In this document: in pieces, positions 30,343 through 63,654 of the stretch
Position numbering within the stretch: position 1 is the stretch's first letter
How the letters are laid out: each line of letters begins with the position of its first letter
Virus record (IMG/VR): IMGVR_UViG_3300029286_000009
Span: 1 to 64,000 of that record
Length of the DNA stretch: 64,000 nt
Reading direction: 5' to 3' (one strand)
Notes under the pieces: generated by a model
What the model saw: the letters and a program-made list of their open reading frames with translations, nothing else
Told to the model about the DNA's origin: nothing
Database searches by the model: none
Translations under genes and position numbers: made by a program

Positions 30343-30580
30343 TAAAATAACAACATTTACCAAGCCCCGCCGGATCGAAAAGACCGGTAGAACTATTTAT
30401 ATACAACAGCTGGATGGGAATAAGCTATCTGGTCGTTTAGTTGGGCATCGTTCTAATATATTTATAGTTGAGGATTCTAAAGACGGTATATTAAAAGAAA
30501 TACATAGAGCTACAATTGTAAGATTTATGTTGGTTATAGATGGTGGTAAATCGAAGATAAAAGGAGGGGAGGATGAGTGA
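30320..30580 (+). CDS. Sm/LSm/Hfq-like small protein
   Basis: TIYIQQLDGNKLSGRLVG resembles Sm1; KEIHRATI resembles the Hfq Sm2 motif YKHAI. Confidence 0.55.
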   Translation: MITKDMDNKITTFTKPRRIEKTGRTIYIQQLDGNKLSGRLVGHRSNIFIVEDSKDGILKEIHRATIVRFMLVIDGGKSKIKGGEDE

Positions 30581-31943
30581 TGATTTAACTTTAGACCAGC
30601 ATATTGTTGCATTAGAAGCAGCTGGTTATGTTATTAAGAATCCTGAGGAACCCAGGAAGAAAATAAGGCTTATATACTATGGAGACTCTCCTAGTGTAGC
30701 GACTGGTTTTGGTAAAGTTGCAAGTAATATTCTTCCCCGTTTATGGGAAACAGGTGACTATGAAATTATGTGTTTTGGTGTGAATTACTGGGGTGTTCCT
30801 CATCCTTATCCCTTCCAAATCTATCCGATGTTACCTAATCACCAAGGCGACCCTTATGGGCGAGAGAAGGTGATGCAAGTCATACCCAATATTGATTTTG
30901 ATATTGCTTTTTTCCTCCAAGACTCTTTTATCATGACCTTTATACCCCAGCTAATCGAGGAATGCAAAAAAAAGGGCAAAAATTTCAGAACCCTTTCTTA
31001 TTTTCCTATAGACGGGACCCCATGGCCTGAGTGGATTGAAGCGATGTCTGCAACGGACATCTCCGTTACATATACGGAGTGGGGTAGGAAAGAGTGTGTA
31101 AAAGCTTATCCACCTATTGGTGATAAGCTACAGGTAATACCACACGGCATTAGCTTGAAGGAGTTTTACCCAAAATCTCCTGAAGAGAGATTACAAATAA
31201 GGAAGATGCTCTTCGGGCAGTATGCAGATAAGTTTATAGTAATCAATGTGAATAGGAATCAGCAACGTAAAGATTTGCCCAGGTCAGTAATGGCGTTTAG
31301 AGAATTCAAAAAAGATTGCCCAGATAGCGTAATGTATTTTCATTGTGCAGAACAAGATGTGGGATGGAATATGCCCAGGATAGTACAACATTTAGGACTG
31401 AAGCCTGGAGAAGATGTGTTATTTCCACGGGACTTTAATGTCAATCAGGGGTTTCCTGTAGCGTGGATGAACGATTTATATAACGCCGCAGATGTGAATA
31501 TCAGTACAACCCTTGGCGGCGGGTGGGAACTTTCTAGCGTAGAAGCCCTAAGTTGCCGAATTCCTTGCATTTTTCCCAATAACTCGGCCCTGACTGAGAT
31601 TTTTGCGGATGGGCGTGGGTTCTTATGTAGGAGTGGAGATACCCCAAATATGCGCGGAGCCTTTCCCATGGATAACGACATCATACGACCTTTTACTAAT
31701 ATAGAAGACATGGTTAAATATCTTAAGCGACTTTATGAGGACAAAAAATCAGGCGGGCGGATTGCTAAGCAGATGACCGATAAAGCTTATAAATGGGTAG
31801 TGGAGAACTTACAGTGGGAGAAGCACATCGTACCAAGATTTGATGCAATGTTTAGGGCACTCTATGCTGACTTGCAGACTCCGCAGGAGAACAAGTTGAT
31901 ACAGGAAGTCGGGAAGGGCTGGAGAAAGGGAGAGGTTATCTAA
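30573..31943 (+). CDS. Glycosyltransferase, GT4-like (GT-B)
   Basis: GDSPSVATGFG, IPHG, NVNRNQQRKD, LYNAADV..STTLGGGWELSSVEALSC..P. Confidence 0.85.
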   Translation: MSDDLTLDQHIVALEAAGYVIKNPEEPRKKIRLIYYGDSPSVATGFGKVASNILPRLWETGDYEIMCFGVNYWGVPHPYPFQIYPMLPNHQGDPYGREKVMQVIPNIDFDIAFFLQDSFIMTFIPQLIEECKKKGKNFRTLSYFPIDGTPWPEWIEAMSATDISVTYTEWGRKECVKAYPPIGDKLQVIPHGISLKEFYPKSPEERLQIRKMLFGQYADKFIVINVNRNQQRKDLPRSVMAFREFKKDCPDSVMYFHCAEQDVGWNMPRIVQHLGLKPGEDVLFPRDFNVNQGFPVAWMNDLYNAADVNISTTLGGGWELSSVEALSCRIPCIFPNNSALTEIFADGRGFLCRSGDTPNMRGAFPMDNDIIRPFTNIEDMVKYLKRLYEDKKSGGRIAKQMTDKAYKWVVENLQWEKHIVPRFDAMFRALYADLQTPQENKLIQEVGKGWRKGEVI

Positions 31944-31944
31944 A

Positions 31945-33921
31945 GTGTCAAGGAAGTATACTCTAGAGGATATTAGAAGAATATTATCAGAAAAGGGATA
32001 TGAACTACTTTCTGATACTTATACTTCAGCTATGTCCCCGATTTCTATACAATGTTCGTGTGGGCACATTATTAAAATATCCCTGTCCAATTGGAAGAAG
32101 AGGGGTTGTACACGTTGTAATCAACTAGAGATTGAAAAACTTAAGCAAGAGGAGATTCAACGAGCAACTTTAGACTTAGTAAGCCACGGGTTCGATGTGG
32201 TTGTTTGTCCAGACCAAATATCTTTACCATTTACATTGCGGTGTCAACAAGGACATCAATTTTCAAAGAAGTATTGGTATGTAGTCAATGATACCTATAA
32301 ATGTATGGAGTGTGAGAAAGAAAAGAGATGGGACGAATCCAAGATCAGGTGCGTAATAGAACAAGAAGGCTATACTATAGAGTCTATTAGGGTTAGAGGT
32401 GTAAATACTTCTATTTCGGTAGTGTGTCCAGAGGGACATCATTTTACCATTAAGTTCAAATCCTGGTTGGAAGGAAAACGTTGTAGACGGTGTAAGGGTG
32501 TCCTAGTTAATTTAACAATAGGCGAGGTAAGAAAGTATATAGAGTCCGAAGGCTACCGACTGCTTTCTAACAATTTTAATGGTATACAGTCAATGCTTGA
32601 GGTCGAATGTCCAGAGGGGCATCGTTATAAAGTTAGTTGGTCAAACTGGTGGCATAACAAAAGGCGATGCAGAAAATGCTTTGGTACAGTTAAACCAGAA
32701 ATTGAATACATTAGTAAGACCTTGGAGAAGGAAGGGTATAAACTACTGTCTACAGAATATGTAAACGCCAAATCTAACTTAGAGATGATATGTCCTGATG
32801 GACACATATTTACACAGCAATGGAATACGTGGAGGAATGGTTCTCGTTGTCCTACGTGCTTCGGAACACCAAAAATTGATTTTGGTTGGTTAAAAGATAG
32901 GTTTATGGAAAAGGGTATTACAGTGATGTCCTCGCACTATGAAGTGAGCCAGTCTAAACTTGATGTTGTATGTGAGAAGGGGCATAAATTCAAATATTCA
33001 TGGGCAGACTTTAGACGTAATGGGGCTTGCCCATTTTGTAATTTTGGTTCCTCAAAAATGGAGAGAGATATTAAAGAGTATGTTGAGTCCTTGGGATTTG
33101 AAGCCGAGGCCAACAACCGGCGTGTAATTCACCCACTTGAAATTGATGTATTTATTCCAGAAATTATGGTGGGCATTGAGACATGCGGTCTTTATTGGCA
33201 TTCACAGCTGGCTGGAGAAAAAGATTACAAATATCATTTCAATAAGTTGGAAAAATGTGAGGCGGTGGGAATAAGGTTAATTACAATATTTGAGGACGAA
33301 TACTGTAATAACAAACCTTTGGTGTATAAAAGAATTGCACATATTTTAAATAAAAATTATGGCGAAAAAATATATGCCCGAAAATGCCTAGTTTCTCGTA
33401 TAGATGCAGATACGGCTAATAAGTTTGTGGAAGAGAATCACTTACAGGGTGTGGGACAAGCCAATATCCATTTAGGGGCGTTCTACAACGGAACCTTGGT
33501 TGCTGTCATGACCTTCTCCAGCAATCTTACTGTCAGGAATATACAAAATCGTCCAGGACTGTGGGAGCTAAACAGATTTTGTGGAAGCCAGGATAAGGTG
33601 GTTGTAGGAATAGCTTCAAAGATGCTAGCATACTTTGAACGGTGCTATGTTTGGAACACCATTTTATCATTTGCTGATCGTAGGTGGTCTGAAGGTCGTG
33701 TCTACAGTAGTTTAGGGTTTGAACTTCTGAAAAAAACTAAACCTGATTACTGGTATTTAATAAAATATCGTAAAAGATTACATCGTTCTAATTTGCAAAA
33801 GGATGAGAATGACGACCCTTCTCTAAGTGAATGGGAAAATAGGCAGTTACAAGGGTATGATAGGATTTGGGATTGCGGTAGTATAAAGTTCGTAAAATAT
33901 AATACCAAAGAGGTAATATAA
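31945..33921 (+). CDS. Putative homing endonuclease: six CxxGH...CxxC zinc-ribbon repeats, PD-(D/E)XK nuclease and C-terminal GNAT-like domain
   Basis: Repeats CSCGH, CQQGH, CPEGH (twice), CPDGH, CEKGH; LEIDVFIPE...GIE.CGLYWHS; IYARKC...NHLQG...WELNRFC...SFADRRWSEG...RIWDCG. Confidence 0.72.
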   Translation: MSRKYTLEDIRRILSEKGYELLSDTYTSAMSPISIQCSCGHIIKISLSNWKKRGCTRCNQLEIEKLKQEEIQRATLDLVSHGFDVVVCPDQISLPFTLRCQQGHQFSKKYWYVVNDTYKCMECEKEKRWDESKIRCVIEQEGYTIESIRVRGVNTSISVVCPEGHHFTIKFKSWLEGKRCRRCKGVLVNLTIGEVRKYIESEGYRLLSNNFNGIQSMLEVECPEGHRYKVSWSNWWHNKRRCRKCFGTVKPEIEYISKTLEKEGYKLLSTEYVNAKSNLEMICPDGHIFTQQWNTWRNGSRCPTCFGTPKIDFGWLKDRFMEKGITVMSSHYEVSQSKLDVVCEKGHKFKYSWADFRRNGACPFCNFGSSKMERDIKEYVESLGFEAEANNRRVIHPLEIDVFIPEIMVGIETCGLYWHSQLAGEKDYKYHFNKLEKCEAVGIRLITIFEDEYCNNKPLVYKRIAHILNKNYGEKIYARKCLVSRIDADTANKFVEENHLQGVGQANIHLGAFYNGTLVAVMTFSSNLTVRNIQNRPGLWELNRFCGSQDKVVVGIASKMLAYFERCYVWNTILSFADRRWSEGRVYSSLGFELLKKTKPDYWYLIKYRKRLHRSNLQKDENDDPSLSEWENRQLQGYDRIWDCGSIKFVKYNTKEVI

Positions 33922-35060
33922 TGCCGATAGAAATAAAGATAAAGGGTATAAAAATAACAGGAAATCCCTTCGATGCAAGTGGTTACGGCAGGGGCACACT
34001 TAACTGGATTAAATGCTTGCATAAATTAGGTGTTCCTATGTGGCTCAATCCTGTTACTTTTGAAAAGAGTCGCCCTGAACTTAAAGATGACTTTGAACTA
34101 TTAGATGCACTAGCTCGCTCACCTCGTCCTTACGACATTAACTTTGTGCGGTTGAGCCCAGAGGTAGGCGTCAAAGCCTTTGAAGATGGTAAGATAAACA
34201 TCCTTAGTACAGCTTGGGAAACTAGCAAGTTAGACCCCCTTTGGGTTGAATGTTGTAACCGCTTCAATGCTGTATTCGTAGAAACTGAATGGTCTAAGGG
34301 GGTATTTGTAGACTCGGGTGTTACTGTACCAGTGTTGGTAGTTCCGAATTGTATAGATGTTAATTACTATAAACCTAAAAGTGAGGTTAATACTGGACAG
34401 TATACATTCTATTCTATTCAGCAATGGATAGAACGTAAAAACGGTATAGGGCTACTCAAGGCTTATTTTAATGCGTTCTCCCCTGACGATAATGTTTTGT
34501 TGATTTTGAAAACATACATAACTAGAATGGATGATCTACAAAATCAACAAGGTATAATAAAGGGACATATCGATAATTTAAAGAAGTCTTTGAATCTGAA
34601 ACAGGGGTATCCACCGGTTTATTTAGTTACTGATAATCTAAGTGATACAGAACTAAAGGAAATGCATGAGCAATGTGATTGTTATGTGCTCCTAGACCGT
34701 GGAGAAAGTCTAGGGTTACCTTTTATGGAGGCAGCTGCAGCGGGTAACCCAGTTATAGCAACGGATTGGGGCGGTTCTAGGCAGTTTCTGCATTCAGGTA
34801 ACTCTTATTGCGTGCCGTATCAACTTACTTTCGTTGAGAATATGATGTGGAATCCATTCTATAACGGAACGCAATGCTGGGCAGACCCAAACTTACCTGA
34901 AGCGGCTAAAATAATGCGACATGTGTATGATAATAGAAATGACGCGTTTAGTATGGGTATGCGGGCACGAGAAGATATGCGTTCTAAGTTTAACGAAGAA
35001 ATAATTGCAAAGGCTTTATTGGGGGCCATTGCCGAGGTAGTTTCTGGGGTCAAAATATGA
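33921..35060 (+). CDS. Glycosyltransferase, GT4-like (GT-B)
   Basis: SGYG, AWETS, VVPN, ERKN...LLKAY, CDCYV...RGESLGLPFMEAAAAG.PVIAT.WGG. Confidence 0.87.
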   Translation: MPIEIKIKGIKITGNPFDASGYGRGTLNWIKCLHKLGVPMWLNPVTFEKSRPELKDDFELLDALARSPRPYDINFVRLSPEVGVKAFEDGKINILSTAWETSKLDPLWVECCNRFNAVFVETEWSKGVFVDSGVTVPVLVVPNCIDVNYYKPKSEVNTGQYTFYSIQQWIERKNGIGLLKAYFNAFSPDDNVLLILKTYITRMDDLQNQQGIIKGHIDNLKKSLNLKQGYPPVYLVTDNLSDTELKEMHEQCDCYVLLDRGESLGLPFMEAAAAGNPVIATDWGGSRQFLHSGNSYCVPYQLTFVENMMWNPFYNGTQCWADPNLPEAAKIMRHVYDNRNDAFSMGMRAREDMRSKFNEEIIAKALLGAIAEVVSGVKI

Positions 35061-35932
35061 TTTCTGTTATAGTTAGTATCATGGACCGCACTCATCTACT
35101 CAAGCATAGCATGGAAGCGGTGTTAGAAAACAGGAGAGCAACCCCTTGCAATGATATACTAGAAGTGAATGTATGTGATAGCGGTTCCACCGATGGACTA
35201 GAAGATTATTTAGAGGAGCTAAGCAACAAGGAATACATTGGTAGAGTAAACAAATGGTATTTGGATGAAACAAAGAGTCCTTATAAAAAGCGGTTTAATT
35301 GCCCTGCTTTGATTTACAACTGTATGGTTAATGCTTCCTCGGGTGAGTACATATTAAAAATTGACCCTGAGTTTACGTTCATAACTGATACGTTTATGGA
35401 CAAAGCTTTATTTATTTTGCGGGATGAGAACAGACCAGCAATAGTTATGCCCTTACCACATCACGTATATGATTTTGAATTTAGTAGTGTGCAGGATATA
35501 AGAGATAAATATAAAGGATATGAATACGCAACACACATCACACGAGAAACTGCTCCACGTTGCAATGTCTACTACGGGTGTATTTTCAGACGCGTCGACT
35601 ACATAAATTTAGGTGGAATAGATGTTCGCTTCTTAAATTCAGTCGGGAGTGAAGATGACCATATGATGGATAGGTGGCGGGCTGTGTATGGGGAGAATAA
35701 TGTAGTAACGTTATTAGAGGAAGAAGGAGTTCACTTGTGGCACGGTGAGTGGGGTAAGGGTGTTCCAGCCCATTTATATACTTGGGTGGATGTAGGTGTA
35801 AATCTACGAAATTCCCTTAAGCATATAAATCCCAATGATGGGAAGTTTAATTCTATAAAGTGGCCTGAATTGGTATTGGACTCGTGGCGTCAAGGCAAAC
35901 AAATCATTTCAAAAAGGGTGGTACAAGATTGA
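35057..35932 (+). CDS. Glycosyltransferase, GT2-like (GT-A)
   Basis: MISVIVS, VCDSGSTDG, YILKIDPE, LGGID.RF...GSEDD, HLWH. Confidence 0.82.
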   Translation: MISVIVSIMDRTHLLKHSMEAVLENRRATPCNDILEVNVCDSGSTDGLEDYLEELSNKEYIGRVNKWYLDETKSPYKKRFNCPALIYNCMVNASSGEYILKIDPEFTFITDTFMDKALFILRDENRPAIVMPLPHHVYDFEFSSVQDIRDKYKGYEYATHITRETAPRCNVYYGCIFRRVDYINLGGIDVRFLNSVGSEDDHMMDRWRAVYGENNVVTLLEEEGVHLWHGEWGKGVPAHLYTWVDVGVNLRNSLKHINPNDGKFNSIKWPELVLDSWRQGKQIISKRVVQD

Positions 35933-36873
35933 GAATACTAATGCATACCCCCAACTATGTCGACAGCTCGGCGTGCTCAATCGTTGACGGCTTGCTGTCG
36001 TTAGGACACGTTGTTTATAATACTCGTGGACAATTAAACTATGGGGAGGCTTATGATGGTCGGTCTCTCTATGATTTGTATCTCATGGCAGATACAGACG
36101 ATGTAATAATGGCACGTGAACTCTCCGGTAAAAAACGCCCCCGTGTAGTTATACACGCACACGATAGATGGACTGATTATTTGTATGCACCAGATAGTCC
36201 GATAAAGCCTGTCCCGAATATTGAATGTGACCTCATGTTTGTAAGGGATTTAGATGAAACAGTGTGGGGAAAGCGTTCATATCCTGTAATCTCATTAGAT
36301 TATGCCATTGAAAGACGCTACATGGAAGCTTGTGATAAATTTCGTGACCTACCACGAGAGAATAAAATGGTTTTTTATGGCACTCTTACTACCGCTCGTC
36401 GCAATTTTTACTTAGATAAAGTACGTAATGCAGGACTAAGTGTTCAGTATGGTAAGTATAAGTTTAATCAGCCAGATGATAAATGGTCACAATGGATACA
36501 CGGGCGGTATACACATGACGAGAATTACTATAAGGCTCTGTGCCAATCTATGTTCGCCTTTGCCCCGCTTGGTGCGGGGTCGAGCTGTTTTCGCCACATG
36601 GAAGCTTATGCGGCGGGGTGCATTCCTGTTATTCAGCAGTACCCAGAGGATATTGTAGGATTGTGGAAATTTGAGGACGAATTTAATTGCATTATGTGGA
36701 AGAACGAGTATGAACTTATTAGTAAGTTGGTGCATTATATGAACCACCCCGAAGAAGCAGAACAGTTAAGACAACAATGCTTTGATTACGGGCAAGAACA
36801 TTTATTATCCAAACATCTTGCTGAATATATGCTGGAGAATATCGAGGAGGTTAAGTTTTGGAATTATCGATAG
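35884..36873 (+). CDS. Glycosyltransferase-like (CgeB/exostosin-like GT-B C-terminal domain)
   Basis: Y..ALCQSMFAFAPLGAG..CFRHMEAYAAGCIP. Start is probably the TTG at 35929. Confidence 0.72.
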   Translation: MASRQTNHFKKGGTRLRILMHTPNYVDSSACSIVDGLLSLGHVVYNTRGQLNYGEAYDGRSLYDLYLMADTDDVIMARELSGKKRPRVVIHAHDRWTDYLYAPDSPIKPVPNIECDLMFVRDLDETVWGKRSYPVISLDYAIERRYMEACDKFRDLPRENKMVFYGTLTTARRNFYLDKVRNAGLSVQYGKYKFNQPDDKWSQWIHGRYTHDENYYKALCQSMFAFAPLGAGSSCFRHMEAYAAGCIPVIQQYPEDIVGLWKFEDEFNCIMWKNEYELISKLVHYMNHPEEAEQLRQQCFDYGQEHLLSKHLAEYMLENIEEVKFWNYR

Positions 36874-37661: not shown

Positions 37662-37944
37662 AATAGCACTAGTATTTGAAAGAATTTATGTAGATAAACT
37701 AGGAGATATATTTACACCGCATGAATTAACAATGTTATCAGGGTATTTAGAAGCTGTAAAAAAGATTGGGGATGACTATTGGTACATTATGAAAGAACCC
37801 AATAGCATTACCAATATGTTTCTTTTTATTAACGAAATGCCTAGTAGTGCTAGAGAAAATATACGAAAGATGCACATTATTAGGTATACTGACCACGCAA
37901 CTATGGCATTGAACTCGGGCGAGGTAATTACAGGAGGTTGTTGA
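37654..37944 (+). CDS. Hypothetical protein
   Basis: 96-aa ORF overlapping both neighbours. Confidence 0.55.
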   Translation: MAKIALVFERIYVDKLGDIFTPHELTMLSGYLEAVKKIGDDYWYIMKEPNSITNMFLFINEMPSSARENIRKMHIIRYTDHATMALNSGEVITGGC

Positions 37945-39204: not shown

Positions 39205-39205
39205 T

Positions 39206-56366: not shown

Positions 56367-56719
56367 AAGTGTACAGTTATCAAAATAATGTGGTAAGAAC
56401 AGCACTCGGGGATGTAGAGTTTATCATCAAAGACATAAAAGGATATGATGAAAAATTATTGTGTGTGGGTATATGGTTGGTATATCCTGATTGCAAGTGC
56501 AGAAAAGATGCAGTAGTTTATGTAAACCGCGAGTGGTTCACACCAGAATTTATCTTTAGGCGTATTGGTTACGAAACTGCGGTCTTGCTAGCTCAGGGGT
56601 TTATAATAGACTGTGAAACGTGTCCTAAGTGCAAAAAGCTGAACAGAATAGCTAGAGACACAAAGTTACTGGGTATAAACCTAATTCGGTATTCAGATAT
56701 AAATCATTGGAGAAATTAA
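56363..56719 (+). CDS. Hypothetical protein
   Basis: 118-aa ORF overlapping both neighbours; Cys motifs. Confidence 0.5.
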   Translation: MKVYSYQNNVVRTALGDVEFIIKDIKGYDEKLLCVGIWLVYPDCKCRKDAVVYVNREWFTPEFIFRRIGYETAVLLAQGFIIDCETCPKCKKLNRIARDTKLLGINLIRYSDINHWRN

Positions 56720-57627
56720 TGCAAAATGTTTCTATTTGTCTGACGTTACGGAATAGAGCAAATTTATTAAAGTGGTGCTTAGAAAGTATTACACGACAGG
56801 ATTGTGACCTTTCTAAGGTGGAAGTGTGTATTACAGATGGTGGGTCAACCGATAATCTTTTGACTACGATTGACCAATTCTCAGAGAAACTTACTTTTCG
56901 TTTTTGTGTAGCTGATAGAAGGAAGGCTTACATCCCTGTGGCTTCTAATTGTCCTGCGAATGAGATTAACTTGGCAACGAAATTCGTAGCTACGTCTGAC
57001 TACATAATCAAGACAGACCCAGAGATAGTGTTTAGAGACCCATGGGTAATTTCTGAGATAGTATCGTGTTTAGAACGAGATGACTCCTGTATGTATAATG
57101 CCCGCACACACTTTACTAGAGAAGATGGGTGGTTCTCTTCTTACGATGATATTATAAGAGATTATGAGAAGCATTATGTTGTAGCTGAGAACTCGTTATT
57201 TCACAGATCAAAATTTTACTTCTGTTCTGGGTTTTCTCGTCAGCGATTTGTAGAAATGGGTGGGGTAGAAGAGTTAATGGGGCTGGGTGTTGGATATGAT
57301 GATACACTATATCGTGAAGTATTTCGGAACAGATATGGTTCCTATGAGAAAGAAATCACGGGACAAGCTATCCATTTGTGGCATGGGGCTAACCAATCAC
57401 GCTCTACGTGGGAAGTAGCCAATAGCCGTATATTTGATTATCTAAAGTATGATGTAATCTCTAATGTGGTTAGGTTAGATGGGCAGGGGCATCTCATACG
57501 TCTGCCTGAGCCGCAGTGGGCTAATCCAGAAATGCTAAGTAAAATTTATACGATTAAGAACGGGCAGATTACAAAGGTGGATGATGTTAATGATGGAAGC
57601 TCTAGAGAACTTGAGTTACCTTTTTAG
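56707..57627 (+). CDS. Glycosyltransferase, GT2-like (paralogue of 35057..35932)
   Basis: NR..LL...LESI..Q, EVCITDGGSTD, NCPA..N, YIIKTDPE, MGG..E....GYDD, HLWHG. Confidence 0.82.
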   Translation: MEKLMQNVSICLTLRNRANLLKWCLESITRQDCDLSKVEVCITDGGSTDNLLTTIDQFSEKLTFRFCVADRRKAYIPVASNCPANEINLATKFVATSDYIIKTDPEIVFRDPWVISEIVSCLERDDSCMYNARTHFTREDGWFSSYDDIIRDYEKHYVVAENSLFHRSKFYFCSGFSRQRFVEMGGVEELMGLGVGYDDTLYREVFRNRYGSYEKEITGQAIHLWHGANQSRSTWEVANSRIFDYLKYDVISNVVRLDGQGHLIRLPEPQWANPEMLSKIYTIKNGQITKVDDVNDGSSRELELPF

Positions 57628-57641: not shown

Positions 57642-58664
57642 GTGTATAACCATATAATTCAAATGTTAGAGCCGCATGCCGATAAGGTATCTTATTTGTC
57701 TCGCATGCGTCAAACCCAAGCGTTCTTTGAAGAGGCGGGGATAATTGATATTATAAATAAACCTCACGTAGAGGAACCATTGTCAATAGTATGGGCATTG
57801 AGCACCCAGGCTGGAGAGGTTTTTGATGCCCAGTTAAGATGTTTATTGCAACAGTCTAGCATCTTACAAGATCATGATCAAATTGTGTTGGTCGCTGAGA
57901 AAGAACGCAGGCAGGAGGTTACTAGTGTGGTTAGTAACCTGGCTGAATTCGTTGATATCAAAGTTATTTATATAGACAGACATTGTGTAGGAGACCGTCC
58001 TACATTGAATTGGGATATCGGGTTAAACTACGCAAAATATAACAGAGTTTTGTTTCTTAGGGACTTATGTCTCTTTTTTAATCCATGGAACCTGATTAAA
58101 GAGGCTAGGGAAGTTTCTATTACCAATCGTATTACTAACATGAGTGTGATTTTAGGTCCTACTCTAAGTAGATATACAGACCAGTGGGCTTACTTAGTTC
58201 ACCCCTTTTATTCGCCCACGCCATTTTTGTTTGCTTTTGTAGCAAGCCGCGACGATGTAAAGCGAATAGGGGGGTTTGACCCTGTATTTGCTCGTGGATT
58301 TGATCATGCAGGTGAGTTAGACTTTATGATACGATGGGCGATGAAGAACAATACTTACGATATCAATGGTGACATAACTGTATTGCATCCTGGAATTCCG
58401 ACAACAAGAGCGTCTCTCGAAGAAATGCAATTTCATTCTACAGTGAACCGCCGCTATTTCTACGATCGTTACGGGGAAGAATTCATAAACAAATTGAAGC
58501 CGCCACTGAAGCTGGATCTGCCTTTGATAGAGGTTAACCACGCACTCACACTGTCTCCATTTATGGTTAAACCGTTGGACGACCAGTTCGTAGATTTACA
58601 ACCAAAAGCATTTGATTTTATGAAACGACCACTAGATTATTATGTGGTAGAGGAAACCCAATGA
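57642..58664 (+). CDS. Divergent GT2-like glycosyltransferase
   Basis: RIGGFD..F..G....E.DF..RW. The expected DxD position reads LRDL. Confidence 0.62.
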   Translation: MYNHIIQMLEPHADKVSYLSRMRQTQAFFEEAGIIDIINKPHVEEPLSIVWALSTQAGEVFDAQLRCLLQQSSILQDHDQIVLVAEKERRQEVTSVVSNLAEFVDIKVIYIDRHCVGDRPTLNWDIGLNYAKYNRVLFLRDLCLFFNPWNLIKEAREVSITNRITNMSVILGPTLSRYTDQWAYLVHPFYSPTPFLFAFVASRDDVKRIGGFDPVFARGFDHAGELDFMIRWAMKNNTYDINGDITVLHPGIPTTRASLEEMQFHSTVNRRYFYDRYGEEFINKLKPPLKLDLPLIEVNHALTLSPFMVKPLDDQFVDLQPKAFDFMKRPLDYYVVEETQ

Positions 58665-59750: not shown

Positions 59751-60615
59751 AATGGAATGGTATGTAGCATCTGGAGCGTTAGGTTGGGATGGGCGGGGCT
59801 GGTTTTGGGAAAAACCTTTAGTATGGTCAGGTATTATAGACCCTGCCCTGTTTACAGTCACAACCAAGACATTAACATTAAACCCCAATAAAGGAAATTG
59901 GTTTGCCGTCTGTCCTGTTCGTGGCGGCGTTTGGAATAATATGGGGTTACCGAATAAAGGATTGCGGTGGTGGTTGGATAATTACTATTTGAAGAACAAA
60001 GCTGTGTATAAGAGCCCGTGTCATAATATACACCGAGGAACTTTACCCTACAAGACACTACTTTCTCTTGCTCCTTCTACACCTGAAGAAGCAGTAGCAA
60101 TGATGAATCTTTTGGATGACTATGATGTAATATGGGATTGGAATTTTAAAGGGCTTGAATTAAATGTCTCATGCCCAAACGTCCACAACATTGAATTTGA
60201 ACAAATAAGTGAAATAATTGATGCTTGCAATGAAACTGTAGCAAGTAATACAAAAGGAAATGGAGTGGTGCGGTTACGAATGACTATCAAGCTGAATCGT
60301 TCTCAAATAAGATTTGGGTATAGAAAATTACAAGAACTCGTTCCTAAGTGTAAAGCAGTGTCATTAAATTCTGTACCAGATACTTATGGTAATGGGGCAT
60401 GGTCAGGTAAGAGAGCACAGCTGGGAAACTGGTCTGCTGCGGCGTTACTTCAGCATATGGGTTTCAAAGTAATTTGGCCTTCTATTTGGGAGTATGGGGA
60501 TATACAGAGAGCGATTGATGGGGGAGCCCAAGCCATATCTTTTGGTGCGGTGCATCTGTTACGTTCCTGGGCACCCTCAATGTGGGTGCGCCGGTATATG
60601 AAGGAGAGAGTATGA
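59740..60615 (+). CDS. pyrD: Dihydroorotate dehydrogenase-like FMN enzyme
   Basis: ASG, TTKTLT..P.KGN, N.MGLPNKG, ELNVSCPN (class 1 catalytic Cys), IKL, SG, GA.A. Confidence 0.7.
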   Translation: MGYKMEWYVASGALGWDGRGWFWEKPLVWSGIIDPALFTVTTKTLTLNPNKGNWFAVCPVRGGVWNNMGLPNKGLRWWLDNYYLKNKAVYKSPCHNIHRGTLPYKTLLSLAPSTPEEAVAMMNLLDDYDVIWDWNFKGLELNVSCPNVHNIEFEQISEIIDACNETVASNTKGNGVVRLRMTIKLNRSQIRFGYRKLQELVPKCKAVSLNSVPDTYGNGAWSGKRAQLGNWSAAALLQHMGFKVIWPSIWEYGDIQRAIDGGAQAISFGAVHLLRSWAPSMWVRRYMKERV

Positions 60616-61502
60616 GTGAATTTATTTGTGCATATGGGGTCGTCATCGAACCTCTTGTGGGGCGACTTCCAGTTCATGAGAGCATTCAGAGTATATATGA
60701 TGCGGTGGATCGGATAATTATCTTAGACCAATCCAAGTATGACAGAATTGACTTATCAATGTACGGAAAAGTAGAACACATTAAAGGTGTATTTAATACG
60801 TTTGATAACCCGATTGGATCTGCTTATAATAGTGCTTTAAAACGAGCATCTATATATGCAGACCTACTTTTATTTTTAGATCTTGACGAAATTTTTGAAT
60901 TCAAAAATGAAAGTCTAAAAGACATAGCTAAGCATTATCCTTTAGAGTCGGGGGCTGGTATTGCTTTTAGTTTGGTAAATTACTACTGTAGTAGAAATTT
61001 TGTAATAGATGGATGTAGTAGTAAAGGTTCCCATTTATTTCGTAACTCAGACAATTTATTCCATGACTTGTTACAAGGGCACTGGACACCGCACAGCCAG
61101 ATTAGAAGAACTAACGTAGAACCAGATTTAAACGACGGAGTACGTCTGGGTGACCAGGTGGGTAGACCTATGGCACACTACCCCCCTATTCCTGCAGAGG
61201 ACGTTACGGTGCATCACACAAGCCATCTTGATCCAATCGGAAAGATGGTTAGAAGTGCTGTGCAGTTTAATCATGTAGCTACGATTGACCTACCACTCTT
61301 TTCTCCTTATGATATGCGGTTGACACCAGAAGCAGCAGCACGCATTTATGAATTAGGGGAGAAGAAGATAAAGGATAAGAACTTAGTTCTATGGGGTAAC
61401 CCGGTCCCGTTTGAGTACGTTCCGAATAAGCTATTAGAACAGTATATTCAGCGATGTAATATCACAGAATTTGATCCCACAGATTTTTTCGTTCAGACGT
61501 AA
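60612..61502 (+). CDS. GT2-like glycosyltransferase
   Basis: ESIQSI.D.VDRIIILD, N.AL..A...LLFLDLDE, LFRN, HH (track start 60582). Confidence 0.7.
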   Translation: MSEFICAYGVVIEPLVGRLPVHESIQSIYDAVDRIIILDQSKYDRIDLSMYGKVEHIKGVFNTFDNPIGSAYNSALKRASIYADLLLFLDLDEIFEFKNESLKDIAKHYPLESGAGIAFSLVNYYCSRNFVIDGCSSKGSHLFRNSDNLFHDLLQGHWTPHSQIRRTNVEPDLNDGVRLGDQVGRPMAHYPPIPAEDVTVHHTSHLDPIGKMVRSAVQFNHVATIDLPLFSPYDMRLTPEAAARIYELGEKKIKDKNLVLWGNPVPFEYVPNKLLEQYIQRCNITEFDPTDFFVQT

Positions 61503-61547: not shown

Positions 61548-62717
61548 ATGGCAACTAAGACAGAGAAGAATTTGCGACCAAGGAGTTTAAGTCCAACTTG
61601 TATTGAAGCCTTTTTACAATGTACTTTGAAATTCTGGTACCGGTATCATACTAAAGAACCAGAAGTAGGGGACACTACAGCACTAAGGTTTGGGAGTGCA
61701 GTCCACTCTGCCTTAGAAGCATTTGCTAAAAAATTGCAGGCAGGTGCCGTGTTGGACACTGATTTATGTGAGAGTATCGCACAGAATGAGTTTATGTCTG
61801 CCGCCGCCGAAAACCGTATAATTGACCCTGCCCTTATTAAGGAGGGGCAGGATATGATGCGGGCGCGATACAACAGACATAACCCAACATATCCAATTGT
61901 AGCAGTAGAATTAAACTTCAGCAAAATGAAAATGACCACAGACAAAGGTGTGCCTATAAATGGTATTATAGACTTAGTTCAAGAAATGACGCCGGACATG
62001 GCACTGATTGTGGACTACAAGACTTCTCGGCGGGCTAAGACCCCGTCAGAAGCTCAGAGTGATGTGCAGTTGTCCATGTATGACTTGTTAATCTCTAAGA
62101 AGTACCCCAAATACAGCAAAGTATGGTTGGCTTTGGAGTTTCTTAGAAGTGAAGCTGTCATTTCTGACCGGGTAGTTGCTGATAGGGTTTCTTTTGAGCG
62201 TTGGTTGAATGAACTCTGGGTAAATATGGGGGACCAGCACGAGAAAGATGTTAAGCCGACAATAAACCAGTATTGTCCTTGGTGCGGTTATAAGCATCTT
62301 TGTCACGCATTTAAACATGTGTTGGATGCTGATATCCAGTTAATCCCAACAGCGTCATTAGACTCAACGACAGTATTTACTGAAGAGTGGAAGAAAGCCA
62401 AGGCATTAGAAAAAATTGCTTCCGAAAGGATACTAGAGCTGAAAGCGTGGGCGAATAATGCGGTGGAACTGGAGGGGCTATTTAAATTTGAGGATGATAC
62501 CTCAGTGTTATCCTGGAACCAGAGCAGCCGTACATTTTATGATGCAAAAACTTTACTACCCCATATCCCCCTGGATGACTTGGCAAGGATAGTTTCCATT
62601 AAGAATGAAGCATTGCTAACTTATGTAAATAATGAACGCCCCGACCTCAAACCAGTAGTAGACGCAGCTACACGGTCAACAGTAATGGGAGCAAGAATAA
62701 CCACAAGGAAGAAGTGA
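61548..62717 (+). CDS. PD-(D/E)XK Cas4/RecB-like exonuclease
   Basis: LSPT....F.QC, FGSAVH.ALE, E, G.ID, IVDYKT, QL.MY, CPWC.Y...C (four Cys of the Fe-S staple). Confidence 0.85.
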   Translation: MATKTEKNLRPRSLSPTCIEAFLQCTLKFWYRYHTKEPEVGDTTALRFGSAVHSALEAFAKKLQAGAVLDTDLCESIAQNEFMSAAAENRIIDPALIKEGQDMMRARYNRHNPTYPIVAVELNFSKMKMTTDKGVPINGIIDLVQEMTPDMALIVDYKTSRRAKTPSEAQSDVQLSMYDLLISKKYPKYSKVWLALEFLRSEAVISDRVVADRVSFERWLNELWVNMGDQHEKDVKPTINQYCPWCGYKHLCHAFKHVLDADIQLIPTASLDSTTVFTEEWKKAKALEKIASERILELKAWANNAVELEGLFKFEDDTSVLSWNQSSRTFYDAKTLLPHIPLDDLARIVSIKNEALLTYVNNERPDLKPVVDAATRSTVMGARITTRKK

Positions 62718-62733
62718 TCCTGAGGAGAAGATA

Positions 62734-63654
62734 ATGAGGTGGCTACTTATTGGCGGAGGTGGTTTTATAGGAAGTCACCTCACTTCTTTCTTGCTTAAAA
62801 ATAAACAGGAAGTAATAGTATATGATAATAACTCATTTTGCTTACCAGGAGATTTAATTGCAACAAACTTCCACCGGTATTTAGGTGACGTATCTAATAC
62901 GACCACTTTAGCTACTGTGGTAAACGTGCATAACCCAGAAGTAGTATGCTGGTTAGTGGCGTTTCATGCCTATGATGCGGGTGAAAATCCATTTATCAAG
63001 GTGTCTTGGCTGAACTACACATTGAATAATGTTTTACCAGTGGTTGCTACAGCCCCCCGCAAATTTGTTTTATTTTCTTCAGAAGCAGTTTACGTTCCAC
63101 AACAAGAACTTATAGTAGAAGAGAGCCCTTTAAGGTGGGGGCACCCTAGAACGGAAATTCAAGGGCACATAATCACTGAATGGTACACCAGGAGTTTATG
63201 TGGACACCTAAAAATACCCTATATGATTTTAAGACTTTCAAATACAATAGGTAAACGACAATTTTATCACCCAGTAGTAGACCGGCTTTCTTTTATGATA
63301 GACCATATTTTACTGAAGAGTCCTACTCTAATAATTACAAACCCTAACCAAGCCCGAGACTACTTATACATAAATGACGCAATTCCAATGATATATAAAA
63401 TCATTCGTAACGGGCAAGGAGGACAAGTATACAACATTGCGAGTGGGATAGGTGTTACGAATGATGAGCTATTACAGGAACTTATAGAGCTTACCGATCC
63501 GAGTCATTTACCTAAGGTGGTAGACAGTAAAGAGGCGAATATTGTATTGTCAACTGCCAAATCCGCCCCAATTGCTAAGGGTAAGATTACCCCCATCAAT
63601 CGGATATTACCTGGATTAGTAAACTATCGCAAAGAAATACTAGGAGGCTTTTAG
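62734..63654 (+). CDS. NDP-sugar epimerase-like SDR lacking the catalytic YxxxK
   Basis: GGGGFIGSHL, VYDN, SS.AVY, LR.SN..G, Q.RDYLY..D, YNIASG. The YxxxK position reads TEIQGH. Confidence 0.75.
   Translation: MRWLLIGGGGFIGSHLTSFLLKNKQEVIVYDNNSFCLPGDLIATNFHRYLGDVSNTTTLATVVNVHNPEVVCWLVAFHAYDAGENPFIKVSWLNYTLNNVLPVVATAPRKFVLFSSEAVYVPQQELIVEESPLRWGHPRTEIQGHIITEWYTRSLCGHLKIPYMILRLSNTIGKRQFYHPVVDRLSFMIDHILLKSPTLIITNPNQARDYLYINDAIPMIYKIIRNGQGGQVYNIASGIGVTNDELLQELIELTDPSHLPKVVDSKEANIVLSTAKSAPIAKGKITPINRILPGLVNYRKEILGGF

What the first reader, a model, noticed from the sequence alone, without database searches (positions are those of the whole stretch)
30573..63654. Phage-encoded ~33-kb glycan-building locus with no export machinery: candidate virion (or DNA) glycosylation system
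Seen: about 11 glycosyltransferase-like genes (GT4, GT2, GT17-like, a GT2-GT4 fusion), 4 methyltransferases, an O-acetyltransferase, a sulfotransferase, 4 NDP-sugar SDRs and three heptose genes. They are co-oriented and coupled between phage replication genes. In this window I see no initiating phosphoglycosyltransferase, Wzx/Wzy, ABC exporter or GtrABC-like membrane set, and the GTs look soluble. Known: cellular O-antigen/capsule loci and serotype-converting prophages need such membrane components, whereas chloroviruses, mimiviruses and some mycobacteriophages glycosylate their own particles with soluble GTs. Inference: this phage builds a complex methylated, acetylated and sulfated heptose-containing glycan in the cytoplasm and attaches it to virion proteins or DNA, on a giant-virus scale.
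Basis: partly seen in the sequence, partly recalled or inferred. Interest (0 to 1): 0.88.

Follow-up and report, generated by a model that had tools for sequence, protein, structure and literature searches.

The report
Megaphage-encoded heptose glycan assembly locus
A 33-kb block of an uncultured 260-320 kb phage really does encode a sugar-building factory with no export genes nearby. It has a GDP-heptose pathway, about ten soluble glycosyltransferases, and methyl-, acetyl- and sulfo-transferases. The block is conserved across a whole clade of huge phages, but what the glycan is attached to remains unproven.

Summary
Window 30573-63654 carries 9 supported glycosyltransferase genes (10 domains) and 2 possible ones. 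It also carries 4 methyltransferases, a hexapeptide acetyltransferase, a sulfotransferase, 4 NDP-sugar SDRs and GmhA/HddA/HddC-like heptose genes. All are co-oriented and tightly packed between DnaJ-RuvC and DNA polymerase A.

The window is the first 64 kb of IMG/VR contig IMGVR_UViG_3300029286_000009 (260 kb; a 320-kb ENA version exists). Tail-protein homologues and giant proteins lie upstream.

I found no initiating phosphoglycosyltransferase, flippase, polymerase, ABC exporter or multi-pass membrane protein in about 109 kb of this phage or in the relatives' loci.

New here: the locus is syntenic in at least six related huge-phage contigs (83 to 647 kb; 40-82% aa identity). Several of its glycosyltransferases are lineage-restricted families. 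Relatives add an APS kinase.

The "Mom" protein is a Hef-like homing endonuclease, not a DNA-modification enzyme. Two phage restriction-modification pairs, ThyX and UDG argue against bulk DNA hypermodification.

Best reading (about 0.4): cytoplasmic glycosylation of the phage's own proteins. Main rival (about 0.3): remodelling of the host envelope glycan through host carriers and exporters, which is the literature's usual reading of jumbo-phage sugar clusters. I class it as a new variant of a known kind.

The parts
30573..31943 (+). GT-B (GT4-like) glycosyltransferase; first gene after DnaJ-RuvC
   Evidence: PF00534/PF13692 at about the cut-off. Best PDB hit is chlorovirus NY-2A GT B736L, 1.4e-7. 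A 458-aa orthologue with PF13692 sits at the same position in the 171-kb relative.
31945..33921 (+). Hef-like homing endonuclease with a Mom-like C-terminal domain; a selfish insert, not a pathway gene
   Evidence: phrog_559 at 6e-127 and phrog_3339 at 1e-90. tblastn finds multi-copy homing endonucleases in Campylobacter and T4-like phages. Pfam Mom matches only residues 482-634.
33921..35060 (+). GT4 glycosyltransferase
   Evidence: PF00534 at 1.9e-11. 58-62% identical orthologues in L019 and L031.
35057..35932 (+). GT2 glycosyltransferase
   Evidence: PF00535 at 22.5 bits, just below the cut-off. The 44%-identical orthologue in L019 carries PF00535.
35884..36873 (+). GT-B glycosyltransferase of the CgeB / Glyco_trans_1_2 type, also GT47-like
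   Evidence: PF13524 at 3.4e-8; PF03016 at 8e-7. Orthologues in four relatives.
36858..37661 (+). Conserved 267-aa protein; possible GT-A glycosyltransferase
   Evidence: No Pfam, PHROG or PDB hit. 43% identical orthologue in L019. Only a local, non-significant hhalign match over the GT2 'DxD' region.
37938..38753 (+). ADP-ribosylglycohydrolase; conserved at this position but its role in the glycan pathway is unknown
   Evidence: PF03747 at 4e-30. Orthologues at 45-48% identity in L019 and L031.
39206..39907 (+). SAM methyltransferase (Methyltransf_24)
   Evidence: PF13578 at 1e-10.
39910..40779 (+). Lineage-restricted GT-A fold glycosyltransferase; the most conserved gene of the locus
   Evidence: AF2 pLDDT 81, pTM 0.82. 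Foldseek hits GT-A glycosyltransferases. H115-x-D117-x-D119 is invariant. Homologues are 55-82% identical. Only 14 representative clusters in 1.84 billion proteins. None in GTDB genomes.
41061..41570 (+). SocA/Panacea antitoxin-like gene behind the only large intergenic gap; an insert, not a pathway gene
   Evidence: PF13274 at 5e-18. Best promoter-like site at 40836-40865. Absent at this position in L019. The likely true start is the ATG at 41110, which follows a GAGGAGG motif.
41797..42570 (+). SAM methyltransferase (Methyltransf_24)
   Evidence: PF13578 at 4e-11. 52-54% identity in relatives.
42571..43104 (+). Hexapeptide-repeat O-acetyltransferase (XAT class)
   Evidence: PF00132. NCBIfam Vat/CatB-type models at 3e-41, but far below their cut-offs.
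43113..44045 (+). GT17-like glycosyltransferase, lineage-restricted
   Evidence: PF04724 at 5e-5, below the cut-off. 13 homologues at 50-72% identity, one fused to Methyltransf_11, and one remote hit annotated GT17.
44038..44673 (+). TylF-type sugar O-methyltransferase
   Evidence: PF05711 at 1.7e-18. 71% identity in the 545-kb relative.
44675..45370 (+). Sulfotransferase (Sulfotransfer_2)
   Evidence: PF03567 at 33 bits against a cut-off of 22. Relatives keep it and add an APS kinase.
45384..46409 (+). Extended SDR; probable GDP-heptose C4 dehydrogenase/dehydratase
   Evidence: PF01370 at 3e-26. Top PDB hit 6vo6 at 1e-76.
46902..47903 (+). GDP-L-fucose-synthase-like SDR (3,5-epimerase / 4-reductase type)
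   Evidence: NCBIfam NF047922 at 1e-51. PDB GDP-L-fucose synthases at 4e-41.
47875..50265 (+). GT2 + GT4 two-domain glycosyltransferase (796 aa)
   Evidence: PF00535 and PF13641 at residues 50-309; PF13439 and PF13692 at residues 453-759. 787-830 aa orthologues in four relatives.
50253..50837 (+). SAM methyltransferase (Methyltransf_24)
   Evidence: PF13578 at 4e-12.
51074..51919 (+). Short SDR (epimerase/reductase type)
   Evidence: PF01370 at 3e-16.
52179..52895 (+). RNase HII; a replication gene that keeps its place inside the locus in relatives
   Evidence: PF01351 at 7e-35. Same position in four relatives.
54020..54781 (+). Sugar-1-phosphate guanylyltransferase (HddC/ManC-like)
   Evidence: PF00483. 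NCBIfam HddC at 1.6e-23 and ManC at 3.5e-24, both below cut-offs.
54812..55804 (+). GHMP kinase (HddA-like heptose-7-phosphate kinase)
   Evidence: PF00288. NCBIfam HddA at 4e-23, below the cut-off.
55797..56366 (+). Sedoheptulose-7-phosphate isomerase (GmhA)
   Evidence: PF13580. NCBIfam GmhA models at 3e-40 and 4e-37. At most 42% identity to any GTDB genome hit.
56707..57627 (+). GT2 glycosyltransferase
   Evidence: PF00535 at 4e-9.
57642..58664 (+). Lineage-restricted GT-A/GT2-fold glycosyltransferase (340 aa)
   Evidence: 12 homologues at 41-66% identity, none with a Pfam hit. AF2 pLDDT 68. Foldseek hits K4CP, ppGalNAc-T2, PcManGT and GlfT2.
60582..61502 (+). Possible glycosyltransferase (weak evidence)
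   Evidence: phrog_13126 'beta-1,4-glycosyltransferase' at 1.4e-4 only. No Pfam or PDB hit.
62734..63654 (+). Extended SDR (4,6-dehydratase/epimerase type), wedged between the PD-(D/E)XK nuclease and DNA polymerase A
   Evidence: PF01370 at 2e-27 and PF16363 at 9e-18. The same PDDEXK-SDR-PolA order holds in relatives.

Best explanation
The locus is a phage-owned, cytoplasmic glycan factory.

Shown by sequence:
- The phage can turn sedoheptulose-7-phosphate into a GDP-heptose, using GmhA, an HddA-like kinase and an HddC-like guanylyltransferase. The 7-phosphatase step is missing and is presumably supplied by the host.
- It can remodel that nucleotide sugar with up to four SDR enzymes. One is very close to PDB 6vo6. 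Another resembles GDP-L-fucose synthase.
- It has 9-11 glycosyltransferases without membrane spans, four O-methyltransferase-type enzymes, one acetyltransferase and one sulfotransferase.
- The whole set is inherited as a syntenic module by a clade of huge phages.

Inferred:
- These enzymes build one or a few multi-sugar glycans that contain heptose and are methylated, acetylated and sulfated.
- The glycan is most likely attached in the cytoplasm to the phage's own proteins. These would be virion surface proteins such as the capsid, the tail or the giant fibre-like proteins encoded just upstream.
- Particles would therefore leave the cell already coated. Mycobacteriophages, chloroviruses and mimiviruses do this with their own particles, and Bacillus mother cells do it with the spore crust.
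For: - Enzyme content.
- No export or initiation genes and no multi-pass membrane protein in about 109 kb of this phage, nor in the relatives' loci.
- The same gene order, from DnaJ-RuvC to PD-(D/E)XK-SDR-PolA, is kept in contigs of 545, 647/381/199, 171, 147, 114 and 83 kb. Identity is 40-82%.
- Three glycosyltransferases belong to small families found essentially only in this lineage. One of them has no relative in 185,579 GTDB genomes.
- GC content of the locus equals that of the rest of the window.
- Together these points argue for a conserved, phage-side acceptor and against a recently captured host-serotype cassette.
- One glycosyltransferase is of the CgeB type. The first one is nearest to a chlorovirus enzyme among solved structures.
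- A homologue of the GT17-like gene is fused to a methyltransferase.
- Giant proteins and tail-protein homologues are encoded directly upstream. One has a Ser/Thr-rich tract.
Against: - There is no direct evidence for any acceptor.
- The locus sits in the replication block, not among head or tail genes.
- Soluble glycosyltransferases are also normal in cellular O-antigen and capsule loci.
- Heptose, methyl, acetyl and sulfate decorations are typical of bacterial surface polysaccharides.
- About 210 kb of the 320-kb genome was not inspected, so membrane components could lie elsewhere.
- Capsid and terminase genes were not reached.
- Sulfated glycans on phage particles have no precedent that I know of.
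- Several family assignments are below curated cut-offs.
- The model for 57642 is only moderately confident.
Confidence: 0.4

Rival explanations
1. Host-envelope remodelling. The phage glycosyltransferases work at the inner face of the membrane on host undecaprenyl-phosphate-linked intermediates. The host's own initiating enzyme, flippase or ABC exporter, and ligase then put a new or altered O-antigen, capsule, teichoic-acid or S-layer glycan on the infected cell. This could block superinfection or stop progeny from adsorbing to debris.
For: - This is the published reading of comparable clusters in jumbo cyanophages. Those clusters have SDR paralogues, sugar kinases, nucleotidyltransferases and several glycosyltransferase families (PMC7824862).
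- Huge-phage surveys file glycosyltransferases under host manipulation or envelope glycan synthesis.
- The closest characterised chemistry is the GDP-heptose modification pathway of the Campylobacter jejuni capsule (PMC10680097).
- The locus lies among early/replication genes, as expected for a host-takeover function.
Against: - The module is syntenic and conserved across deeply diverged phages. The cyanophage clusters are described as sporadic and polymorphic.
- Key glycosyltransferases have no close cellular relatives.
- GmhA is at most 42% identical to any genome hit, with no consistent donor taxon.
- A glycan made by 9 or more foreign glycosyltransferases would have to be accepted by the exporters and ligases of many different hosts.
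Confidence: 0.3
2. DNA hypermodification. The glycosyltransferases decorate a modified base in phage DNA with a heptose-containing oligosaccharide to escape host nucleases.
For: - The locus is interleaved with replication genes (RNase HII, PD-(D/E)XK, PolA).
- Phage glycosyltransferases are known to put mono- to tri-saccharides, including heptose, on 5hmC (bioRxiv 10.1101/2023.12.21.572611; PMC13326640).
- A C5 DNA methyltransferase lies about 6.9 kb downstream of the locus end.
Against: - No dCMP/dUMP hydroxymethylase or TET/5mYOX enzyme was seen in about 109 kb.
- That C5 methyltransferase is paired with an R.HinP1I-like nuclease. A second pair (N6/N4 methyltransferase plus a BglII-like nuclease), several Dam-like methyltransferases, ThyX and UDG are also present. 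This fits ordinary, methylatable bases.
- The 'Mom' hit belongs to a homing endonuclease.
- Known DNA glycans use one to three glycosyltransferases. They do not use about ten plus methyl-, acetyl- and sulfo-transferases.
Confidence: 0.08
3. Another cytoplasmic acceptor. The enzymes make a free or lipid- or protein-bound glycoconjugate that is neither on the virion nor on the envelope. Examples are a glycosylated small molecule, modification of host proteins, or modification of injected giant proteins. Alternatively, the block is several unrelated sub-pathways that only look like one.
For: - TylF-type and XAT-type enzymes also occur in natural-product pathways.
- The block has at least three sub-clusters separated by non-glycan genes.
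- An ADP-ribosylglycohydrolase is conserved inside it, and relatives add a Macro-domain gene. This hints at other chemistry.
Against: - No polyketide, non-ribosomal peptide or aglycone-forming genes were seen.
- The sub-clusters stay together in the same order in all relatives examined.
Confidence: 0.15
4. The contig is cellular (a chromosome or plasmid) and the locus is an ordinary surface-polysaccharide cluster.
For: The gene classes are those of cellular O-antigen and capsule loci.
Against: - It is an IMG/VR viral contig.
- Upstream proteins hit a PHROG tail family.
- Giant ORFs of 2046-4849 aa have no Pfam domains beyond discoidin (F5/F8 type C) and weak Big_1 hits.
- Genes are dense and run in one direction, with homing endonucleases, restriction-modification pairs and phage-type replication genes.
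- No tRNA or Rfam hit, and no cellular housekeeping gene in the stretch examined.
- No relative of the 39910 family in GTDB genomes.
Confidence: 0.01

Closest known systems
Sugar-production and glycosyltransferase clusters of jumbo cyanophages (e.g. the 15-gene cluster of P-SSM2; Iyer et al. 2021, PMC7824862)
   Same: A phage-encoded block with several SDR epimerase/dehydratase paralogues, a sugar kinase, a nucleotidyltransferase and glycosyltransferases of several families. No exporter is encoded alongside.
   Different: - This locus is about twice as large (about 24 glycan genes).
- It has a GHMP (HddA-like) kinase, not a PfkB kinase.
- It adds a GmhA-based heptose route, sulfation, four methyltransferases and a GT2-GT4 fusion.
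- It is syntenic across a clade, whereas the cyanophage clusters are sporadic and polymorphic.
- There is no sequence relationship to GenBank phages.
Virion glycosylation of mycobacteriophages (Freeman et al. 2023, as summarised in PMC12619734)
   Same: Phage-encoded soluble glycosyltransferases, with no exporter, proposed to act on phage structural proteins in the cytoplasm.
   Different: Those systems have only a few glycosyltransferase genes and rely on host nucleotide sugars. Here there is a full sugar-activation and decoration pathway, and the acceptor is untested.
Giant-virus glycan machinery (chlorovirus and mimivirus; own knowledge)
   Same: The scale is similar, with many virus-encoded glycosyltransferases, NDP-sugar enzymes and methyltransferases. 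Synthesis is cytoplasmic and independent of the cell's secretory or export route. The best solved-structure match of the first glycosyltransferase is chlorovirus B736L.
   Different: This is a bacterial virus. Similarity is at family level only, and heptose and sulfation are not features I know from those viruses.
Campylobacter jejuni capsular GDP-heptose modification pathway (PMC10680097)
   Same: [quoted passage not shown] A C4 dehydrogenase or dehydratase and C4 reductases of the SDR family then remodel it. The window's 45384 matches PDB 6vo6 at 1e-76.
   Different: The cellular pathway feeds a capsule that is exported across the envelope. The phage lacks a recognisable GmhB and a cupin-type C3/C5 epimerase. 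Its reductase-like SDR is closer to true GDP-L-fucose synthases.
Phage DNA glycan hypermodification gene clusters (Pyle et al., bioRxiv 10.1101/2023.12.21.572611; PMC13326640)
   Same: Phage glycosyltransferases, sometimes with sugar-activation genes, next to DNA-metabolism genes. Heptose is a known DNA-linked sugar.
   Different: No base-activating enzyme was found. There are far more glycosyltransferases and decorating enzymes than in any known DNA system. The genome also carries restriction-modification pairs that imply ordinary bases.

Membership tests
Cellular Wzx/Wzy- or ABC-transporter-dependent O-antigen/capsule locus | Initiating phosphoglycosyltransferase (WecA/WbaP type, multi-pass membrane protein) | tested here: not met
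   No such Pfam family and no multi-TM ORF in the window, in 25 kb upstream, in 20 kb downstream, or in relatives' loci. The rest of the genome was not examined.
Cellular Wzx/Wzy- or ABC-transporter-dependent O-antigen/capsule locus | Flippase/polymerase (Wzx, Wzy) or ABC exporter (Wzm/Wzt, KpsMT) | tested here: not met
   Same scans as above. The only membrane-like ORF is a 69-aa two-helix protein at 52947-53156.
Cellular Wzx/Wzy- or ABC-transporter-dependent O-antigen/capsule locus | NDP-sugar synthesis genes plus several glycosyltransferases in one co-oriented block | tested here: met
Serotype-converting prophage modules (GtrABC / O-acetylase type) | GtrA flippase, GtrB bactoprenol glucosyltransferase and a membrane Gtr(type) enzyme | tested here: not met
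   No GtrA or membrane glycosyltransferase families, and no multi-TM proteins.
Serotype-converting prophage modules (GtrABC / O-acetylase type) | Temperate phage carrying the module next to the integrase/attachment site | tested here: inconclusive
   No integrase in the about 109 kb seen. The locus lies between replication genes. The whole genome was not seen.
[quoted passage not shown] | GmhA sedoheptulose-7-phosphate isomerase | tested here: met
   55797: NCBIfam GmhA models at 3e-40 and 4e-37, below their curated cut-offs.
[quoted passage not shown] | HddA kinase and HddC guanylyltransferase | tested here: inconclusive
   54812 has HddA as its best NCBIfam hit (4e-23). 54020 scores about equally for HddC (1.6e-23) and ManC (3.5e-24). 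All are well below curated cut-offs. Gene order and adjacency to GmhA favour the heptose reading.
[quoted passage not shown] | GmhB heptose-1,7-bisphosphate phosphatase | tested here: not met
   No HAD phosphatase in the window. The JGI label 'PHP hydrolase' for 39910 is not supported by its GT-A fold.
Phage DNA glycan hypermodification cluster | Base-activating enzyme (dCMP/dUMP hydroxymethylase, or C5 methyltransferase plus a TET/5mYOX dioxygenase) with the glycosyltransferases | tested here: not met
   None in about 109 kb. The one C5 methyltransferase is paired with an R.HinP1I-like nuclease.
Phage DNA glycan hypermodification cluster | Glycosylated bases in virion DNA | not testable with these tools
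   This needs nucleoside LC-MS or raw long-read signal.
Phage virion glycosylation system (mycobacteriophage type) | Phage-encoded soluble glycosyltransferases without an exporter | tested here: met
Phage virion glycosylation system (mycobacteriophage type) | Glycan covalently attached to capsid or tail proteins | not testable with these tools
   The phage is uncultured and its capsid gene was not reached.
Jumbo-cyanophage surface-polysaccharide modification clusters (PMC7824862) | 1-4 SDR paralogues, a sugar kinase, a nucleotidyltransferase and several glycosyltransferase families | tested here: met
   4 SDRs, a GHMP kinase, an NTP_transferase, and GT2, GT4, GT17-like and CgeB-like glycosyltransferases.
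Jumbo-cyanophage surface-polysaccharide modification clusters (PMC7824862) | Sporadic, polymorphic distribution among related phages | tested here: not met
   The core is syntenic in every relative examined, although accessory genes vary.

The most novel reading that the evidence does not exclude
A previously undescribed clade of wetland/sediment megaphages (83-kb fragments up to 647-kb contigs) makes its own glycan entirely in the cytoplasm. The glycan contains heptose and is methylated, acetylated and sulfated. It coats the virions or the giant tail/fibre proteins. That would be giant-virus-style self-glycosylation in a bacterial virus, the first sulfated phage glycan, and it would use glycosyltransferase families found nowhere else.
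Probability: 0.35. Interest if true: 0.85.

Novelty: new variant of a known kind. Interest (0 to 1): 0.6.

Why it matters
Phage-encoded sugar clusters are usually filed as host-manipulation genes and left untested.

Here about 10% of a 320-kb genome is a glycan factory inherited as a unit by a whole clade. It includes orphan glycosyltransferase families and a sulfation branch. This is strong circumstantial evidence for a function tied to the phage itself.

If the acceptor is the virion, particle glycosylation would extend from a few actinophages to megaphages at giant-virus scale. That would bear on adsorption, stability, escape from grazers or immunity, and phage engineering.

If the acceptor is the host envelope, this would be the most elaborate surface-conversion cassette known in a lytic-type phage.

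Either way the enzymes are new, soluble tools for making GDP-heptose derivatives and sulfated or methylated glycans.

Tried and rejected
- Mom-type DNA modification. The Pfam Mom hit on 31945 is the C-terminal domain of a Hef-like homing endonuclease. Rejected.
- The JGI label 'PHP family hydrolase' for 39910, which could have been the missing heptose phosphatase. There is no Pfam or PDB sequence support, and the predicted fold is a GT-A glycosyltransferase. Rejected.
- Kinship with known phages. Megablast and tblastn against 50,697 GenBank phage records gave nothing close for the DNA, the giant protein, the GT2-GT4 fusion or the sulfotransferase. The helicase is at most 27.5% identical.
- Lak phages share only the homing-endonuclease domain.
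- The 642-kb phage LR756502.1 shares only SDRs and has 31% GC. It is not the same clade.
- Host or donor inference. GmhA hits in GTDB are at most 42% identical and taxonomically scattered. Shine-Dalgarno motifs precede 57% of genes against 10% background. This argues against a Bacteroidota host but names none.
- More relatives from IMG/VR and JGI contigs by peptide patterns. Only this contig and the 545-kb contig were found. Relatives came instead from the protein database.
- Reaching capsid or terminase genes. A 14.5-kb gene (4849 aa) upstream exceeds the 10-kb flank limit, so the head module was not reached.
- Sequence-only annotation of 36858, 57642 and 60582 against PDB found nothing.
- hhalign of the 36858 pair against other glycosyltransferases gave only a local, non-significant match. 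The 39910 and 57642 families are not detectably related to each other.
- Promoter and terminator scans were at background, apart from one strong site before the SocA gene.
- No Rfam family, tRNA or tandem repeat in the window.
- I could not verify with the tools that PDB 6vo6 is C. jejuni Cj1427. That identity rests on my memory.

Full report
WHERE THE WINDOW COMES FROM

The window is positions 1-64000 of IMGVR_UViG_3300029286_000009, which is JGI Ga0247841_10000060 (259,732 bp). The same phage was assembled as a 320,389-bp ENA contig that extends 56.7 kb further upstream.

All genes lie on the + strand. GC content is 0.37-0.44 throughout, GC skew is strongly positive, and there is no tRNA, Rfam family or tandem repeat.

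Upstream of the finding the window encodes proteins of 538, 214, 109, 3198, 2158 and 666 aa with no Pfam or PHROG hit. A replication block follows: a beta-clamp-like protein, RecA, DnaB, primase, DnaJ and RuvC.

Further upstream in the ENA contig are proteins of 4849 aa (discoidin domains), 854, 1001, 458, 507 (Big_1), 650, 390 and 2046 aa. The 1001-aa and 2046-aa proteins hit the PHROG tail-protein family 17517, at 2e-16 and 6e-27.

Downstream to position 83.9 kb come:
- DNA polymerase A, NrdD/NrdG and a split thyX;
- a C5 methyltransferase with an R.HinP1I-like nuclease, and several Dam-like methyltransferases;
- NAD-dependent ligase, an N6/N4 methyltransferase with a BglII-like nuclease, UDG and a second RNase HII.

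This is a huge phage, not a chromosome. It has no close relative among 50,697 GenBank phage records.

THE OBSERVATION

In 30573-63654 there are 45 ORFs. 36 of 44 junctions overlap or are within 15 nt. The only sizeable gap (40779-41061) holds the one strong promoter-like site, in front of a SocA/Panacea gene.

Glycosyltransferases:
- GT4-type: 30573, 33921.
- GT2-type: 35057, 56707.
- CgeB/GT47-like: 35884.
- GT17-like: 43113.
- GT2+GT4 fusion: 47875.

Decorating and sugar-activating enzymes:
- Methyltransferases: 39206, 41797, 44038, 50253.
- Hexapeptide acetyltransferase: 42571.
- Sulfotransferase: 44675.
- SDRs: 45384, 46902, 51074, 62734.
- Heptose genes: HddC/ManC-like 54020, HddA-like 54812, GmhA 55797.

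Two conserved 'hypothetical' proteins turned out to be glycosyltransferases by fold:
- 39910: AF2 pLDDT 81, pTM 0.82, with Foldseek hits to GT-A enzymes and an invariant H-x-D-x-D motif.
- 57642: pLDDT 68, with hits to K4CP, ppGalNAc-T2, PcManGT and GlfT2.

36858 and 60582 are only possible glycosyltransferases. The count is therefore 9 supported genes (10 domains) plus 2 possible, which agrees with 'about 11'.

A hydropathy scan finds no multi-pass membrane protein in the window, the flanks or the relatives' loci. No Pfam family of initiating transferases, flippases, polymerases, ABC exporters, ligases or oligosaccharyltransferases appears anywhere in about 109 kb.

CORRECTIONS

The block is interrupted by genes that are not glycan enzymes.
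- 31945 carries the 'Mom' domain but is a Hef-like homing endonuclease. It matches phrog_559 at 6e-127, and Campylobacter phages carry 14-16 copies. Relatives carry LAGLIDADG or HNH endonucleases at other positions in the locus.
- The other non-glycan genes are an ADP-ribosylglycohydrolase (37938), SocA/Panacea (41061), RNase HII (52179), a weak DHO_dh-like protein (59740) and a PD-(D/E)XK nuclease (61548).
- No GmhB-type phosphatase is present. That step must come from the host or from an unrecognised protein.

SUGAR CHEMISTRY

[quoted passage not shown] Their best family hits are at 1e-23 to 3e-40, all below curated cut-offs, so they are divergent.

SDR 45384 matches PDB 6vo6 at 1e-76. From memory, not verified with the tools, 6vo6 is Cj1427. 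Cj1427 is the GDP-heptose C4 dehydrogenase of the Campylobacter jejuni capsule pathway described in PMC10680097.

SDR 46902 resembles GDP-L-fucose synthases at 4e-41.

A remodelled GDP-heptose is therefore the most likely special donor, and GDP-fucose-type products are not excluded. The other glycosyltransferases presumably use host nucleotide sugars.

Relatives encode an APS kinase next to the sulfotransferase. This supports real PAPS-dependent sulfation.

CONSERVATION (NEW EVIDENCE)

Homologues of 57642, 39910 and 43113 exist on contigs of 545, 647/381/199, 171, 147, 114, 83 and 79 kb. Several of these contigs come from a wetland surface-sediment co-assembly.

Gene lists or DNA for six of these contigs show the same core order:
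- DnaJ-RuvC;
- GT4, GT4, GT2, CgeB-like glycosyltransferase;
- methyltransferase, then the 39910-type GT-A;
- methyltransferases, then SDRs;
- GT2-GT4 fusion, methyltransferase, GT17-like glycosyltransferase, TylF methyltransferase, sulfotransferase, SDR;
- RNase HII;
- NTP-transferase, GHMP kinase, SIS isomerase;
- GT2, then the 57642-type GT-A;
- PD-(D/E)XK nuclease, SDR, PolA.

Identities are 40-82%.

The 39910 family has only 14 representative clusters among 1.84 billion proteins and no relative in 185,579 GTDB genomes. The 57642 and 43113 families are similarly confined. One 43113 homologue is fused to a methyltransferase.

The composition of the locus equals that of the rest of the window.

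The module is thus an old, vertically inherited core of a clade of huge phages. It is not a recent host-derived cassette.

WHAT IT MOST LIKELY DOES

Shown: the coding capacity for a GDP-heptose pathway and for a multi-step, decorated glycan made by soluble enzymes.

Inferred: the acceptor. I favour the phage's own proteins, at about 0.4, for these reasons:
- Conservation in phages that have diverged to 40-60% identity, and that probably infect different hosts, points to an acceptor that travels with the phage.
- Orphan glycosyltransferase families point the same way.
- No export machinery was found.
- There are precedents: mycobacteriophage capsid and tail glycans (as cited in PMC12619734), chlorovirus and mimivirus glycans, and the CgeB-dependent Bacillus spore crust glycan (the last three from my own knowledge).
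- A large set of giant, probably surface-exposed proteins is encoded next door, and one has a Ser/Thr-rich tract.

RIVALS

Host-envelope remodelling through host carrier lipids and exporters (about 0.3) is how comparable jumbo-cyanophage clusters and huge-phage glycosyltransferases are read in the literature. It fits the capsule-like chemistry and the early-gene neighbourhood. Soluble glycosyltransferases do not argue against it. The clade-wide synteny and the lack of cellular relatives do.

DNA hypermodification (about 0.08) has precedent, including heptose on 5hmC. Here, however, no base-activating enzyme was found. The 'Mom' clue is void. The phage's own two restriction-modification pairs, Dam-like methyltransferases, ThyX and UDG imply ordinary bases.

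Other cytoplasmic acceptors, or several unrelated sub-pathways, remain possible (about 0.15).

LIMITS

- About two thirds of the genome, including the capsid and terminase genes, was not reached. A 14.5-kb gene blocks the upstream walk.
- Several assignments are sub-threshold or rest on fold only.
- The host is unknown. Shine-Dalgarno use in 57% of genes argues against Bacteroidota.
- Nothing here tests the glycan or its attachment directly.

VERDICT

I class the finding as a new variant of a known kind: a phage-encoded glycan biosynthesis cluster that is unusual in size, in its sulfation and heptose chemistry, and in its clade-wide conservation.

Noticed in passing
window 31945-33921; relatives' loci: A 658-aa Hef-like homing endonuclease with a Mom-like C-terminal domain sits between two GT4 genes. 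Relatives carry LAGLIDADG or HNH endonuclease ORFs at different places in the same locus. The module is therefore a hotspot for selfish inserts.
   Followed up: yes
window 40779-41787: The only large intergenic gap holds a near-consensus promoter-like site (40836-40865), a 19-codon hydrophobic ORF (40893-40952) and a SocA/Panacea antitoxin-like gene. The likely true start of that gene is 41110, after a GAGGAGG motif. A 57-aa ORF follows at 41614-41787. This may be a small toxin-antitoxin style moron. It is absent at this spot in a relative.
   Followed up: partly
window 37938-38753; relatives: An ADP-ribosylglycohydrolase is conserved at a fixed position inside the glycan locus (45-48% identity in two relatives). 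Relatives also place a Macro-domain gene in the locus. It is unknown whether these serve counter-defence or the glycan chemistry.
   Followed up: partly
window 2978-19051; L013, L015: There is a run of giant ORFs: 3198 and 2158 aa in the window, and 4849, 2046 and 1001 aa upstream in the longer contig. They have no Pfam or PHROG hits, apart from discoidin domains on the 4849-aa protein, a weak Big_1 hit on a neighbouring 507-aa protein, and one tail-protein PHROG domain on the 1001- and 2046-aa proteins. The 2158-aa protein, the only one searched, found nothing in GenBank phages. The 3198-aa protein has a Ser/Thr-rich tract near residues 810-850.
   Followed up: partly
L004 / L033 (contig 64-84 kb, just outside the window): The phage carries two restriction-modification-like pairs: a C5 methyltransferase with an R.HinP1I-like nuclease, and an N6/N4 methyltransferase with a BglII-like nuclease. 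It also has at least three Dam-like methyltransferase ORFs, UDG, NAD-dependent ligase and a second RNase HII. thyX appears split: a 262-aa ORF with a weak HTH hit precedes a 66-aa ThyX C-terminal piece.
   Followed up: partly
window 24431-25000: This protein combines a P22 antirepressor N-terminal domain with a T5orf172/MUG113 (GIY-YIG-like) domain. It sits between RecA and DnaB and is probably another mobile or regulatory element.
   Followed up: no
window 52947-53156: A 69-aa protein with two hydrophobic helices is the only membrane-type ORF in the window. It lies between RNase HII and the heptose genes and is missing at that spot in at least one relative.
   Followed up: no
window 28974-29777: The phage encodes a full-length DnaJ (J domain plus Cys-rich zinc-finger domain) directly before RuvC and the glycan locus. 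The same DnaJ-RuvC-GT4 order occurs in the 171-kb relative.
   Followed up: no
window 59740-60615: A weak dihydroorotate-dehydrogenase-like (TIM-barrel flavoenzyme) ORF lies between small unknown genes and the possible glycosyltransferase 60582. No gene with a DHO_dh hit is listed at this position in the two relatives whose gene lists cover it. Its function is unknown.
   Followed up: no
window, all genes: Shine-Dalgarno motifs (GGAGG, AGGAG, GAGG) precede 57% of starts against 10% at random positions. This points to a host that uses Shine-Dalgarno sites (not Bacteroidota). The standard genetic code gives dense long ORFs.
   Followed up: partly
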